From positions 13,018,818 through 13,082,817 of the forward strand of contig OZ037772.1 in NCBI GenBank assembly GCA_964035545.1: 64,000 nucleotides of DNA, in the 5' to 3' direction. Under the pieces are notes generated by a model. It worked only from the letters and a program-made list of their open reading frames with translations. It was not told the DNA's origin and did not search any database. Shown here piece after piece: positions 2,081-64,000 of the stretch (positions are counted from its first letter, which is position 1; every line of letters starts with the position of its first letter). The translations under genes and the position numbers were made by a program. The DNA is from Bugula neritina (Eukaryota > Animalia > Bryozoa).

Positions 2081-5000
2081 ATGAAGAGATCGTTGTTATT
2101 TGCTGGATTGCTAGTAGCTCTCCTTGTTTTCTCATCACGAGCGGAAGAAGAGGAAAAAGAGGAGAAAGATGACATAGGCACAGTTATTGGTATTGATTTA
2201 GGAACCACATATTCATGGTGAGTTTAGATGACTAGACTTTTTGTTGAGTTGGATATTGAGTTTGGGACTGTTGGTTGAGTGATGAGACAATTCTATTGCA
2301 GCGTCGGCGTGTTTAAAAATGGCAGAGTGGAGATCATAGCTAACGACCAGGGTAACCGTATCACGCCGTCATACGTGGCCTTCACCGCCGACGGTGAGAG
2401 ACTCATTGGAGACTCAGCCAAGAACCAGCTGACCTCCAACCCTGAGAACACCATCTTTGACGTGAAGAGAATGATCGGTAGAACTTGGGACGACAAGAGT
2501 GTGCAGAAAGACATTCAGTACTGGCCCTTCAAGGTGAGGTCATAATAATGCTTAATCATAGTCTCAATTCTACCTGCAAGAAGTAGTCTCTATCTACAGC
2601 TGATGTGTACAAAACTGCTAGTGCTACTTAGTGCTACTTAGTGCTAATTAATACAATAGTTCATTCACCTGATTCATTGAATGAGCAGTAGATGATGCAA
2701 CAGCAACTGTTAACTACACGTGGACTTCTGCTACTGGCTCTCACCTGATTAATCTCTCAGCTAATGGCACCTTCTAGTCCAATCAGCTACAAGTTGTGAA
2801 GTTTAATTCCTTTACTGTGTAACATTAATTATGATAGACATCTGTAAGCTCCTTTTGGGAAGCATTCTTGTAAAACCTTTGATCAACTGGCATTGAATGT
2901 TTAGTTTGTTTCCTCTTAGGTTAAAGAGAAGCAGTCCAAACCCCATGTGGAGGTGAAGGTCAATGGTAAGGACACTCTGTTTGCTCCCGAAGAGATCTCT
3001 GCTATGGTTCTGATCAAGATGAAGGAAGTGGCTGAGGCTTATCTTGGCAAAACTGTAAGTAGCTTATTGCTGCAGAGTCATTGGCCAGGTGACTGGAGTT
3101 GTCTTACTTCTTAGTATGTCAATATATATAACTTGCTCTGCTGCTGTGTAATCAACTCTCCTCCCTCTCAGGTCACACACGCTGTCGTTACTGTACCCGC
3201 CTACTTCAATGATGCCCAAAGACAGGCCACTAAGGATGCCGGAACCATCGCCGGGCTGAACGTTATGCGAATTATCAACGAGCCGACAGCAGCAGCCATT
3301 GCTTATGGACTCAACAAGAAAGAGGGAGAGAAGAACATCCTCGTGTTTGACTTGGGAGGCGGCACCTTTGACGTCTCTCTGCTGACTATCGACAACGGCG
3401 TGTTTGAGGTGGTGGCCACCAACGGAGACACCCACTTGGGTGGTGAGGACTTTGACCAGAGGGTGATGGAGCACTTCATTAAACTGTACAAGAAGAAGAC
3501 CGGCAAGGACATCCGCACCGACAACAGAGCCACGCAGAAGCTGAGGAGAGAAGTGGAGAAGGCAAAGAGAGCTCTGTCCGCCGCCCACCAGACTCGAGTG
3601 GAGATCGAGAGCTTCTTTGATGGAGAAGTGAGTCTTGCTTATTAATTCTTTTCTTTTATATTGACTTCCTCTCTTCAACCCATCTAATTACTAAGTGTTG
3701 ATTAGACTGGTTATATCTTCATATGAATACTGACAGACTTGCTATCATATCCCTCTGCTAATTACTCTAATATTCTCTCTCAGGACTTCTCCGAGACTCT
3801 CACCAGAGCCAGGTTTGAAGAGCTGAACATGGACCTCTTCAGGTCAACCATGAAGCCTGTGAAGAAGGTGATGGAGGACGCCGACCTCACCAAGAAGGAT
3901 ATCGACGAGATTGTGCTGGTCGGAGGGTCAACGAGGATCCCTAAAGTGCAGCAGCTGGTCAAGGTACGTCCTCGCTGTCTCCCCTTCTCACCTCTGACTT
4001 ATGGGTGCTGCCCGTCCCTCCCCCACTCTGTTGTCAGCTCCCCCTCTCTGTTATCAACTCTTTCACTGTGTGTCTGCAGGAGTTCTTTGACGGCAAGGAA
4101 CCAAGTAGAGGCATCAACCCCGATGAGGCTGTGGCTTACGGAGCTGCCGTGCAGGGAGGAGTTCTGTCCGGAGATGAGGAAACCGGCGACATCGTGCTGC
4201 TCGATGTGAACCCGCTGACTATGGGTATCGAGACCGTCGGTGGAGTCATGACTAAACTTATTCCACGTGAGTTACCATGTAATCCTACTCTGTAGGTAAC
4301 TCTACTCTGTAGGTAACTCTCTACTCTGTAGGTAATCCTACTCTGTAGGTAACTCTCTACTCTGTAGGTAACTCTCTACTCTGTAGGTAACTTTCTACTC
4401 TGTAGGTAATTCTACTCTGTAGGTAACTTTCTACTCTGTAGGTAACTCTACTCTGTAGGTAACTCTCTACTCTGTAGGTAACTCTACTCTGTAGGTAATC
4501 CTACTCTGTAGGTAATTCTACTCTGTAGGTAACTTTCTACTCTGTAGGTAATTCTCTACTTTGTAGGTAATTCTACTCTGTAGGTAACTCTACTCTGTGG
4601 GTAACTCTACTCTGTAGGTAACTCTACTCTGTAGGTAACACTGTCATCCCAACCAAGAAATCTCAGATCTTCTCCACTGCTGCCGACAACCAGCCAACTG
4701 TCACCATCCAGGTGTTTGAAGGAGAGAGACCAATGACCAAGGACAACCACCTTCTCGGCAAGTTTGACCTCACCGGGATTCCCCCGGCACCCAGAGGTGT
4801 TCCCCAGATTGAGGTCACCTTTGAGATTGACGTCAACGGCATTCTCAAGGTGAGCTGACAGCTTCCTCCTGAATATTAACACATCACTGTGACGCTACTG
4901 GCTATACTGTTGAGGAATTGTTCTCTACTGCACTGCTGCTGTTACAGGTTTCTGCTGAGGATAAGGGAACCGGCAGTAAGGAGCAAATCACCATCAACAA

Positions 5001-61400: not shown

Positions 61401-64000
61401 TGTACTAATACATACTACTAGGTGTACTAATACATACTACTAGGTGTACTAATACATACTACTAGGTGTACTAATACATACTACTAGGTGTACTAATACA
61501 TACTACTAGGTGTACTAATACATACTACTAGGTGTACTAATACATACTACTAGGTGTACTAATACATACTACTAGGTGTACTAATACATACTACTAGGTG
61601 TAGTAATACATACTACTAGGTGTACTAATACATACTACTTGGTGTACTAATACATACTACTTGGTGTACTAATACATACTACTAGGTGTACTAATACATA
61701 CTACTAGGTGTACTAATACATACTACTTGGTGTACTAATACATACTACTTGGTGTACTAATACATACTACTAGGTGTACTAATACATACTACTAGGTGTA
61801 CTAATACATACTACTAGGTGTACTAATACATACTACTTGGTGTACTAATACATACTACTAGGTGTACTAATACATACTACTAGGTGTACTAATACATGCT
61901 ACTAGGTGTACTAATACATGCTACTTGGTGTACTAATACATACTACTAGGTGTACTAATACATGCTACTTGGTGTACTAATACATACTACTAGGTGTACT
62001 AATACATACTACTTGGTGTACTAATACATACTACTAGGTGTACTAATACATACTACTAGGTGTACTAATACATACTACTAGGTGTACTAATACATGCTGC
62101 TAGGTGTACTAATACATACTACTAGGTGTACTAATACATGCTACTAGGTGTACTAATACATACTACTAGGTGTAATAATACATACTACTAGGTGTACTAA
62201 TACATACTACTAGGTGTACTAATACATGCTACTAGGTGTACTAATACATACTACTAGGTGTACTAATACATACTACTAGGTGTACTAATACATACTACTA
62301 GGTGTACTAATACATACTACTAGGTGTACTAATACATACTACTAGGTGTACTAATACATACTACTAGGTGTACTAATACATGCTACTAGGTGTACTAATA
62401 CATACTACTTGGTGTACTAATACATACTACTAGGTGTACTAATACATACTACTAGGTGTACTAATACATACTACTAGGTGTACTAATACATACTACTAGG
62501 TGTACTAATACATACTACTAGGTGTACTAATACATACTACTAGGTGTACTAATACATACTACTAGGTGTACTAATACATACTACTAGGTGTACTAATACA
62601 TACTACTAGGTGTACTAATACATACTACTAGGTGTACTAATACATACTACTAGGTGTACTAATACATACTACTTGGTGTACTAATACATACTACTAGGTG
62701 TACTAATACATACTACTAGGTGTACTAATACATACTACTTGGTGTACTAATACATGCTGCTAGGTGTACTAATACATACTACTAGGTGTACTAATACATA
62801 CTACTAGGTGTACTAATACATACTACTAGGTGTACTAATACATACTACTAGGTGTACTAATACATGCTACTAGGTGTACTAATACATACTACTAGGTGTA
62901 CTAATACATGCTACTAGGTGTACTAATACATGCTACTTGGTGTACTAATACATACTACTAGGTGTACTAATACATACTACTAGGTGTACTAATACATACT
63001 ACTAGGTGTACTAATACATACTACTAGGTGTACTAATACATGCTACTAGGTGTACTAATACATGCTGCTAGGTGTACTAATACATGCTACTAGGTGTACT
63101 AATACATGCTACTTGGTGTACTAATACATACTACTTGGTGTACTAATACATACTACTTGGTGTACTAATACATGCTACTAGGTGTACTAATACATACTAC
63201 TAGGTGTACTAATACATACTACTAGGTGTACTAATACATGCCACTAGGTGTACTAATACATACTACTAGGTGTACTAATACATACTACTAGGTGTACTAA
63301 TACATACTACTAGGTGTACTAATACATGCTACTAGGTGTACTAATACATACTACTAGGTGTACTAATACATACTACTAGGTGTACTAATACATACTACTA
63401 GGTGTACTAATACATACTACTAGGTGTACTAATACATACTACTAGGTGTACTAATACATACTACTAGGTGTACTAATACATACTACTTGGTGTACTAATA
63501 CATACTACTAGGTGTACTAATACATGCTGCTAGGTGTACTAATACATACTGATATCAAGCCATAGAAAGAAATTGGTAATCTTTAGAGGAGTATTAGAGT
63601 TTACAAATAAATCTGCTCATGTTGTTTCAGAATGACACAGATGACGGTTGGGAGAAAAGTTTAGAACAGCCAATAAAGGGTGGAGCTTGGGCTAAGAGTA
63701 AGAGAGCTGTCACGGAGGGGATATGGCTCTGGGACAGTCCGTTCATTATCAATGGGGTGAGTCTACAAGTTATGTCGGGATCAATAAATAGGCAGCAGGA
63801 AAATGTGTTACTTCACTCACATGAATATCTTCAGAAATGGCTAAATTATTGGTAATATTTTGTTGTGTTCCACTGATAGAAGTGAGATTGAACTCTCAGT
63901 TTACCAAATCACATACAATTGAGTGGTTTTATTTTCAGGTAGCGATCTACTTAATGGACTGCCAAGGGTCGGGGGACGCTGTGCGCAGCAGCCCCACATT
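55475..64000 (+). CDS. Second atlastin/GBP-family GTPase, 5' part only; exons 55475-55501, 55666-55905, 63631-63756, 63939-64000 (truncated)
   Basis: IISITGVFRSGKSFLLNL, WAKSKRAVTEGIWLWDSPF, VAIYLMDCQG; intron positions and phases match the minus paralog, including a 9-codon first exon. Confidence 0.88.
56090..63550 (+). repeat. About 7.46-kb 22-nt satellite GGTGTACTAATACATACTACTA (about 340 units) inside intron 55906-63630
   Basis: Direct reading; few recurrent variants. Confidence 0.98.

What the first reader, a model, noticed from the sequence alone, without database searches (positions are those of the whole stretch)
4267..63630. Intronic satellites made of splice signals, recurring across unrelated genes
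Seen: in three gene families, the repeat unit read on the transcribed strand is a core splice signal. Acceptor+GT: 4279-4639 (+), 51283-52040 (-), 24051-24076 (+), 56090-63550 (+). Branch point: TACTAAC 49967-50668 (-), CACTAAC 48818-49241 (-), CACTAAT 48512-48646 (-). Polypyrimidine-CAG: 36567-37292 (+). GTAAGT donor: 54816-55231 (+). Several arrays end exactly at the functional splice site. Known: AG|GT is the recursive-splicing ratchet signature and TACTAAC is the optimal U2-pairing branch point. Inference: either tandem amplification is seeded at intron boundaries and tolerated because the last unit regenerates the site, or these arrays are used (recursive splicing, multi-branch-point introns, factor sponges). 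Either way the spliceosome must pick one site among tens to hundreds of look-alikes.
Basis: partly seen in the sequence, partly recalled or inferred. Interest (0 to 1): 0.85.

Follow-up and report, generated by a model that had tools for sequence, protein, structure and literature searches.

The report
Intron minisatellites that copy splice signals
The short introns of this marine animal (probably a bryozoan) are swollen by private tandem repeats, a few of which copy the neighbouring splice site or branch point, but across the genome such repeats look like splice signals equally often on both strands, so this is a known oddity and not a new splicing device.

Summary
Most lie in introns of a BiP gene, three IAP paralogs and two GBP-like GTPase genes. 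Spliced RNA-like contigs from a close relative confirm eight introns of one GTPase gene.

Three arrays include or touch the working 3' splice site: the BiP array (its unit carries 5 exon bases), GTPase intron 2, and a 9-mer triplet in IAP-2. Three more run into the branch-point zone. These fit "mirage" minisatellites (amphioxus) and the human F7 VNTR.

The general claim fails. I built an independent sample of 99 arrays from about 22 other genes, oriented by transcription. Units hold AGGT 9 sense vs 11 antisense, CTRAY 12 vs 14, GTRAGT 9 vs 11, and any of four signals 29 vs 30. About 30% of units match a "core splice signal" on either strand, because this genome's minisatellites are rich in GTA/TAC/ACT/AGT words.

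Arrays lie close to splice sites (median about 25 nt) because they fill ancestrally short introns.

No internal site use was seen, and only contigs were available. The scan had already noted this phenomenon elsewhere in this genome. It is a new member of a known kind, of low to moderate interest.

The parts
4267..4634 (+). BiP/HSPA5 intron (GTGAGT...TGTAG). It is 12 nt of unique sequence followed by the array.
   Evidence: Exon frame ...LIPR|NTVIPTKK restored by CCAC|GT...AG|GTAAC; HSP70 exon matches.
4279..4639 (+). 17-19-nt minisatellite (GTAAYTCT(CT)ACTCTGTAG), about 20 copies. It runs 5 nt into the next exon, so it is a 'mirage'-type 3' splice-site array.
   Evidence: TRF; 19 TAGGTAA. The paralog's array-free intron ends ...TTCTCTCTGCAG|GTTAC.
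24051..24076 (+). Three tandem 9-nt acceptor copies (GTTTTTCAG GTTTTTCAG GTTTTGCAG|GTGATGG) before an IAP-2 exon.
   Evidence: Sequence; homologous exon in IAP-3. No RNA evidence.
36567..37292 (+). 49-nt minisatellite x14.8 in an IAP-3 intron. It starts about 13 nt after the likely donor and ends about 170 nt before the next exon. Each unit ends TCTCTCTATTCTATCTACAG.
51283..52070 (-). GTPase gene A intron 2. It is a 30-nt unit (GTATATAGTAGTTATTATGTAATACTMCAG) x25 that ends exactly at the working acceptor CCAG|GTAGCC.
   Evidence: RNA-like joint 51280>52069 with cut +2.
49961..50683 (-). GTPase gene A intron 4. It is 96% array, (ATACTAACTGRT) x57, and the array ends 6 nt before the AG.
   Evidence: The array is locus-private in the genome.
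48804..49274 (-). GTPase gene A intron 7. It holds (GTAACTACTCACTARCA) x25, and the array ends about 20 nt before the AG.
48504..48675 (-). GTPase gene A intron 8. It holds (TACACCTTATTCTACTCACTAATA) x5.6. The last partial unit becomes the pyrimidine tract of the real acceptor.
   Evidence: It shares the core CTACTCACTAA with the intron 7 unit.
56090..63550 (+). 22-nt minisatellite x339 (7.4 kb) in intron 2 of GTPase gene B (counting the predicted 27-nt start exon). It is not adjacent to either splice site; the acceptor is at 63630.
   Evidence: The array is locus-private.
54811..55231 (+). 21-nt minisatellite x20 with GTAAGTAAC, in the divergent promoter / 5' region between the two GTPase genes. 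Its transcription status is unknown.
   Evidence: The predicted gene B start exon has its ATG at 55475 (read).
42735..43054 (+). 30-nt minisatellite x10 holding TACTAACAG, in the apparently intergenic gap between convergent genes. It serves as a chance control.

Best explanation
These are ordinary, locus-private minisatellites. They are a genome-wide feature of this animal, probably a bugulid bryozoan. They arise by local tandem duplication or slippage inside ancestrally short introns and then expand, so the array becomes 50-96% of the intron.

So little unique intron is left that arrays sit a median of about 25 nt from each splice site. A minority overlap the junction itself or the last roughly 20 nt that must hold the branch point. 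In those cases the repeat unit is simply a copy of the real signal, and the exon-adjacent copy keeps working (a 'mirage' or F7-type array).

The remaining look-alikes are base-rate hits: the 22-mer, the 49-mer, the GTAAGT array and the intergenic TACTAACAG array. This genome's minisatellites are built from GTA/TAC, ACT/AGT, CTA/TAG and CAG/CTG words. Those words resemble donors, branch points and acceptors on both strands.

Shown: the array anatomy, the intron boundaries of one gene, the lack of strand bias, and locus privacy. Inferred: the slippage origin, neutrality, and use of only the outermost sites in this individual.
For: Density: minisatellites are dense everywhere, at 0.56 arrays/kb and 9% of 201 kb from about 22 other genes. 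In the window's genes they reach 38%.

Strand test: sense vs antisense in 99 independent arrays gives AGGT 9:11, YAGGTR 5:5, CTRAY 12:14, YACTAAY 3:3, GTRAGT 9:11, and any signal 29:30. The result is the same in 60 arrays with a confirmed exon nearby. In 40 arrays of 5 or more copies it is AGGT 0:4 and CTRAY 1:7.

Shuffles: enrichment over shuffles is symmetric. GTRAGT is expected about 1.5 per strand against 9 and 11 observed.

Vocabulary: the common words are AGTA/TACT, ACTA/TAGT and GTAT/ATAC.

Geometry: median distance is 23.5 nt to the called donor and 26.5 nt to the called acceptor. Collapsed introns are about 40-180 nt. The antisense false-call rate is about 10%.

Origin of the BiP unit: it equals the paralog's intron end plus 5 exon nt.

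Locus privacy: both arrays tested (the 12-mer of intron 4 and the 22-mer of gene B) occur only at their own locus.

Splicing: spliced contigs join the exon-adjacent GT..AG of all eight introns. The spliced ORF is open to CTIL*.

Unit variation: many units have lost the motif, with 13 TAGTAAC, 8 CACTAGC and 70 CTTGGTG.

Branch points: real acceptors in this genome show no TACTAAC consensus (6 of 169).
Against: Within the window the long arrays lean to sense branch-point words (4:0). The independent sample gives 1:7 (Fisher p=0.01, post hoc). All four window arrays are in the two GTPase paralogs.

The independent sample is only 201 kb and is weighted towards a few large genes. Intron calls rest on a home-made exon scorer.

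The RNA-like contigs come from a relative about 93% identical. They cannot show rare isoforms or whether that animal has the arrays.

Collapsed BiP and intron-4 introns (about 29-33 nt) are too short to have been the ancestral introns. Some unique sequence was therefore lost, and I cannot explain how.
Confidence: 0.75

Rival explanations
1. The arrays are used. AG|GT units would act as recursive-splicing ratchets that let a transcript mis-spliced to an internal AG be re-spliced. TACTAAC arrays would give multi-branch-point introns or soak up SF1/U2.
For: Every BiP and intron-2 unit regenerates a donor-like GTAAC/GTATAT after its AG. Intron 4 holds 36 exact copies of TACTAAC (the optimal U2-pairing branch point in yeast, from established knowledge), while the species' own branch points are degenerate. 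Gomafu UACUAAC repeats bind SF1 (PMC3116199). Dual-specific AG|GT sites are used in polyubiquitin (PMC10809524).
Against: There is no strand bias genome-wide, and long arrays if anything avoid sense signals. Many units carry motif-destroying variants. Paralogous introns carry unrelated arrays or none. Spliced contigs show only outer sites, with zero coverage over the TACTAAC and 30-mer arrays. The introns are 0.4-7.7 kb, not the very long introns where recursive splicing is known.
Confidence: 0.07
2. A tolerance filter acts. Duplications arise anywhere, but an array that reaches the last ~20 nt or the junction survives only if its unit carries a usable branch point or AG|GT. Boundary arrays would then be enriched for sense signals even though arrays as a whole are not.
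For: Arrays ending 17 nt or less from a called acceptor carry ACTNAC 5 sense vs 1 antisense (5/18). The rest carry it in 11/104 (sense), p=0.06. GTAAGTA is 0 sense vs 9 antisense in independent arrays, suggesting purging of strong decoy donors.
Against: Three of the five near-acceptor cases come from one gene of this window. Both tests are post hoc and do not survive multiple-test correction.
Confidence: 0.15
3. Everything is chance resemblance. None of the arrays derives from a splice site.
For: About 30% of units match a signal on either strand. An intergenic array holds TACTAACAG nine times.
Against: The BiP array includes 5 exon bases and matches the paralog's intron end. Intron 2 ends in register with the acceptor. 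The last unit of intron 8 grades into the real pyrimidine tract.
Confidence: 0.03

Closest known systems
'Mirage' minisatellites of amphioxus (Adh3, globin genes)
   Same: Tandem repeats whose unit spans an intron-exon boundary. Many units carry AG/GT, and regular splicing is apparently undisturbed (PMC3087553). The BiP array, GTPase intron 2 and the IAP-2 9-mer fit this description.
   Different: The units here are shorter (9-30 nt, against the 150-160 bp globin units and within the 10-72 bp Adh3 range) and include only 2-5 exon bases. The phylum is different. Length instability was not tested here.
Human F7 IVS7 37-bp VNTR
   Same: An intronic minisatellite that repeats a splice site, with the exon-proximal copy used (PMC1557585).
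   Different: F7 repeats the 5' splice site. The clear cases here repeat the 3' splice site or the branch point. The one donor-like array (54811-55231) is not shown to be intronic.
Gomafu/MIAT UACUAAC repeats
   Same: Tandem copies of the optimal branch-point heptamer (PMC3116199).
   Different: The Gomafu repeats sit in a stable nuclear lncRNA exon and bind SF1. Here they sit in an intron that is spliced out, and binding is untested.
Recursive splice sites / dual-specific AG|GT sites
   Same: Juxtaposed acceptor and donor (AG|GT) (PMC10809524).
   Different: There is no RNA evidence of use and no conservation. The introns are short, and the motif is as common antisense as sense.
Intronic minisatellites of C. 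elegans linked to splicing decisions
   Same: Minisatellites inside introns of multi-exon genes (PMC4039745; title and abstract only).
   Different: Those were associated with alternative-splicing multiplicity through regulatory motifs. No such association was tested or seen here.

Membership tests
Mirage-type (junction-spanning) minisatellite | Head-to-tail tandem repeat in a gene | tested here: met
   TRF.
Mirage-type (junction-spanning) minisatellite | The unit contains both intronic and exonic bases of a real exon-intron junction | tested here: met
   BiP: 5 exon nt (GTAAC) in every unit, and the paralog intron end matches. GTPase intron 2: GTA is shared with the exon start. IAP-2 9-mer: GT. 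Not met for the 22-mer, the 49-mer and the arrays of introns 4, 7 and 8.
Mirage-type (junction-spanning) minisatellite | Normal splicing persists | tested here: inconclusive
   The canonical joint for intron 2 is seen only in contigs of a ~93%-identical relative.
Mirage-type (junction-spanning) minisatellite | Length polymorphism or instability | not tested
   No second haplotype or population data were examined.
Recursive splice site (ratchet point) | Pyrimidine tract + AG immediately followed by a GT donor | tested here: met
   BiP, intron 2 and IAP-2 units.
Recursive splice site (ratchet point) | RNA evidence of stepwise removal (junction reads to the internal AG, sawtooth pattern) | tested here: inconclusive
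   Only contigs were available, and none shows an internal joint. Raw nascent RNA was not available.
Recursive splice site (ratchet point) | Orientation-specific occurrence or conservation in introns | tested here: not met
   AGGT in units is 9 sense vs 11 antisense, and 0 vs 4 in long arrays.
SF1/U2 sponge (Gomafu-like) | Tandem UACUAAC | tested here: met
   36 exact copies in intron 4.
SF1/U2 sponge (Gomafu-like) | Repeats reside in a stable, accumulating RNA | tested here: not met
   The array is intronic and has zero coverage in the spliced RNA-like contigs.
SF1/U2 sponge (Gomafu-like) | Binding of SF1 | not testable with these tools
   Needs biochemistry.
F7-type 5' splice-site VNTR | The first repeat unit spans an exon-intron 5' boundary | tested here: inconclusive
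   Array 54811-55231 starts about 27 nt after a candidate donor AAAG|GTAAGTAG, but no exon is shown there. Clear examples exist elsewhere in the genome sample (d5<0).

The most novel reading that the evidence does not exclude
In this genome a selective filter shapes boundary-reaching minisatellites. Strong sense donors (GTAAGTA) are purged from intronic arrays. Arrays that invade the 3' end survive only if each unit carries a branch point, or an AG followed by a donor. A transcript spliced to the wrong AG can then be re-spliced, a self-healing form of recursive splicing. The GTPase and BiP arrays would be the visible survivors.
Probability: 0.1. Interest if true: 0.6.

Novelty: new member of a known kind. 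Interest (0 to 1): 0.3.

Why it matters
That would be a natural experiment in splice-site choice. The data point to something more modest.

This compact animal genome has introns inflated by private minisatellites, which cover 9% of genic DNA and 38% in this near-telomeric window. A few of them duplicate real 3' splice sites or branch points tens of times.

These loci are still handy natural test cases for how the spliceosome chooses among identical decoys. Examples are the essential BiP gene with 19 identical TAG|GTAA sites and an intron made of 57 branch-point units. The phenomenon itself is already described in amphioxus and in human F7, and it had already been noted by this scan elsewhere in this genome.

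Tried and rejected
1. Larger genome sample. The independent sample therefore stayed at 201 kb.

2. Pkinase as a source of introns was useless. The hits were dominated by intron-poor ciliate contaminant contigs.

3. The first setting of my exon/splice caller (LLR 6 or more) had a 35-40% false-call rate on the antisense control. It was tightened to 14.

4. I tested whether the arrays belong to dispersed repeat families. This was rejected, because both units tested occur only in their own array.

5. I asked whether TACTAAC is this species' normal branch-point consensus, so that arrays would simply copy a strong consensus. This was rejected, because only 6 of 169 called acceptors have ACTAAC upstream, with no positional peak.

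6. The odd CC..GC joint at intron 4 is an alignment ambiguity caused by substitutions in the relative. The canonical GT..AG lies 4 nt away and keeps the frame.

7. A literature search for bryozoan intron minisatellites found nothing specific.

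Full report
**What is in the window.**
The window is G000:C8:13018818-13082817, about 270-330 kb from the end of a 13.35-Mb chromosome-scale contig of a 216-Mb assembly. 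It encodes:
- a BiP/HSPA5 gene (+, exons about 2291-5700);
- three tandem BIR/RING IAP paralogs (+);
- two divergently oriented GBP/atlastin-like GTPase genes: A on the minus strand (53448 to about 47430, ending in a CaaX box CTIL) and B on the plus strand (from 55475 beyond the window end).

Earlier notes of this scan call the animal a bryozoan. The genome size and the 'symbiont metagenome' RNA run of a ~93%-identical relative are compatible with a bugulid, but that is inference. Many small contigs of the assembly are ciliate or bacterial.

**Check of the observation.**
TRF finds about 45 distinct arrays in the window.

RNA-like contigs of run X1 (90-95% identical, so a close relative and not this individual) skip eight introns of GTPase gene A at GT..AG. 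After resolving cut ambiguities the introns are:

| Intron | Coordinates |
|---|---|
| i1 | 52194-52964 |
| i2 | 51283-52070 |
| i3 | 50810-51123 |
| i4 | 49961-50683 |
| i5 | 49647-49806 |
| i6 | 49410-49533 |
| i7 | 48804-49274 |
| i8 | 48504-48675 |

A predicted ninth intron lies at 47460-47662. The spliced sequence is one open frame ending CTIL*. The run is on record only as a guess at RNA, but precise removal of eight introns shows that it is spliced RNA.

**Anatomy of the arrays.**
- *BiP.* The intron is 4267-4634 and the array is 4279-4639. Every unit is pyrimidine tract + TAG + GTAAY, and the real junction is TGTAG|GTAACACT. The neighbouring BiP paralog on the opposite strand has the same intron, same phase, about 107 nt long, without an array. 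It ends CTGATTCTCTCTGCAG|GTTAC. The BiP unit is therefore a copy of the ancestral 3' splice site plus five exon bases.
- *GTPase A intron 2.* It has 25 units of 30 nt ending MCAG, and the last unit is the working acceptor before GTAGCC.
- *Intron 4.* It is 96% array: 57 units of ATACTAACTGRT, ending 6 nt before the AG.
- *Intron 7.* The array ends about 20 nt before the AG.
- *Intron 8.* The last partial unit of the array becomes the real pyrimidine tract.
- *IAP-2 'array'.* It is three 9-nt acceptor copies.
- *22-mer array.* Its 339 copies end 80 nt before the acceptor at 63630.
- *49-mer array.* It ends about 170 nt before the next exon.
- *GTAAGT array.* It lies 244-664 nt upstream of the predicted start exon of gene B, in the divergent promoter region. 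It is not shown to be transcribed.

**Is it more than chance?
I built an independent, transcription-oriented sample. Exon-by-exon Pfam matches in the same genome (HSP70, I-set, LDL-receptor class B, spectrin) gave 35 merged intervals, 201,212 bp, from about 22 genes, all written in sense orientation. TRF finds 113 non-redundant arrays there, at 0.56/kb and 9.2% of bases. The window's genes have 0.84/kb and 38%.

Among the 99 arrays with period 7 or more:

| Motif in unit | Sense | Antisense |
|---|---|---|
| AGGT | 9 | 11 |
| YAGGTR | 5 | 5 |
| CTRAY | 12 | 14 |
| YACTAAY | 3 | 3 |
| TACTAAC | 1 | 2 |
| GTRAGT | 9 | 11 |

Broader branch-point definitions (YTNAY, CTNAY, ACTNAC) are also symmetric. 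'Any of four signals' is 29 sense vs 30 antisense. In the window's genes it is 8 vs 7, and in the window's intergenic arrays it is 6 vs 7.

Two restrictions of the sample do not change this:
- Among the 60 arrays with an exon and splice site called within 150 nt, AGGT is 8:8, CTRAY is 10:11 and GTRAGT is 3:5.
- Among arrays of five or more copies, AGGT is 0:4 and CTRAY is 1:7.

Against mononucleotide shuffles the motifs are enriched, but equally on both strands. GTRAGT is expected about 1.5 per strand and observed 9 and 11. The commonest words of the units are AGTA/TACT, ACTA/TAGT, GTAT/ATAC, TACA/TGTA and ACAG/CTGT. This vocabulary looks like donors, branch points and acceptors whichever strand is read. 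For example, CTGTAG and its complement CTACAG both end in YAG, and the complement of a donor (ACTYAC) is itself branch-point-like.

**Why arrays hug splice sites.**
I used a codon-usage exon scorer with an antisense control. At the chosen threshold it makes false calls for 12 and 9 of 122 arrays. With it, arrays start a median of 23.5 nt after the called donor and end a median of 26.5 nt before the called acceptor. Where both ends are called (22 introns) the array is 20-96% of the intron. Keeping one unit collapses the intron to about 40-180 nt. Visual inspection of the 37 largest independent arrays shows the same pattern.

So these are short introns inflated from within, and closeness to splice sites is geometry, not preference. 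A minority of arrays overlap the junction. Four donor-side and two acceptor-side cases occur among 122 arrays, although one of the donor-side calls looks exonic and one acceptor-side call is doubtful.

**What remains unusual about this window.**
The window's long genic arrays carry branch-point words 4:0 in sense, against 1:7 elsewhere (Fisher p=0.01). This comparison is post hoc on a window that was chosen for exactly this feature.

All four arrays are in the two GTPase paralogs, and they are not independent. The units of introns 6, 7 and 8 share CTACTCAC, and introns 7 and 8 share the 11-mer CTACTCACTAA on the same strand.

Arrays ending 17 nt or less from an acceptor show a weak excess of sense ACTNAC. 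It is 5/18 there against 11/104 in the other arrays, and sense vs antisense within the near group is 5:1 (p=0.06). This is expected if the branch point must then lie inside the array.

The only notable asymmetry in the unbiased k-mer scan is avoidance of the strongest donor word. GTAAGTA is 0 sense vs 9 antisense, and TACTTA is 9-10 vs 0. This is suggestive of purging of decoy donors. It is post hoc and not significant after correction. It points the opposite way from 'donor satellites'.

**Other relevant facts.**
- The 12-mer and 22-mer arrays occur nowhere else in the genome, so they are locus-private and not members of a dispersed family.
- Many units have lost the motif, with 13 TAGTAAC, 8 CACTAGC and 70 CTTGGTG, so there is no sign of unit-by-unit constraint.
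- Paralogous introns carry unrelated arrays or none, so the arrays are young.
- Real acceptors of this genome have T-rich tracts and no TACTAAC consensus.
- The X1 contigs have zero depth over the TACTAAC and 30-mer arrays and show no internal joints. Contigs cannot exclude rare isoforms, and the relative may lack the arrays.

**Comparison with what is known.**
- Tandem repeats spanning exon-intron boundaries are described as 'mirages' in amphioxus Adh3 and globin genes. Many units there carry AG/GT and splicing stays normal (PMC3087553).
- The human F7 IVS7 VNTR repeats a 5' splice site (PMC1557585).
- Tandem UACUAAC in Gomafu binds SF1 (PMC3116199).
- AG|GT dual-specific sites are used in polyubiquitin (PMC10809524).

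The junction-spanning arrays here are members of the mirage kind. The recursive-splicing and sponge readings fail or cannot be tested on defining features (see the membership table).

This scan had already noted the same phenomenon on other pieces of this genome (s1-447171, s1-444320, s1-439953, s1-442904). I took the 'mirage' lead from those notes and checked the paper myself.

**Verdict.**
This is a new member of a known kind. Interest is 0.3.

Noticed in passing
window 48504-49533 (-): The arrays of three consecutive introns (6, 7, 8) of GTPase gene A have different unit lengths (26, 17, 24 nt) but share a same-strand core: CTACTCAC, and CTACTCACTAA between introns 7 and 8. This suggests that neighbouring intron arrays seed one another or derive from one source.
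   Followed up: partly
independent genic sample (/scratch/genic.fa): Intronic minisatellite units avoid the strongest donor word on the sense strand. GTAAGTA is 0 sense vs 9 antisense, and TACTTA is 9-10 vs 0. This may reflect purging of decoy 5' splice sites. The result is post hoc and not significant after correction.
   Followed up: partly
window 27855-28108 (+) and 13850-14063 (+): A 138-nt tandem duplication (1.8 copies) covers the C-terminal RING-finger exon of IAP-2, and IAP-1 has a similar pair. These could be alternative last exons.
   Followed up: no
window 13445-13776 and 26966-27401 (+): IAP-1 and IAP-2 carry the same 17-nt array (TGTACTGTAGCAGTGTA) at the homologous intron position. 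This array therefore predates the gene duplication or was copied with it, unlike the GTPase arrays.
   Followed up: no
G000:C8:13011609-13014996 (-), just upstream of the window: A second BiP paralog sits head-to-head with the window's BiP. Its homologous intron is about 107 nt long and array-free. Other introns of this paralog carry their own private arrays.
   Followed up: partly
window 47460-47662 and 47448-47459 (-): The CaaX box (CTIL) of GTPase gene A is split by the last intron. The terminal coding exon has only 6 coding nt plus the stop codon.
   Followed up: no
whole window vs other genes: The window lies about 270-330 kb from a contig end. Its genes are 38% minisatellite, against 9% in genes elsewhere, which would fit subtelomeric enrichment.
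   Followed up: no
small contigs of G000 (e.g. C206, C190, C72): Protein-kinase matches are dominated by contigs in which TAA/TAG are read through. These are the ciliate co-assembled with the animal.
   Followed up: no
window 53422-53448 (-) and 55475-55501 (+): Both GTPase paralogs appear to start with a 27-nt coding first exon (MEAAVSTLI / MATLTSYQV) followed by a GTGAGT/GTAAGT donor. This is predicted from the sequence only.
   Followed up: no
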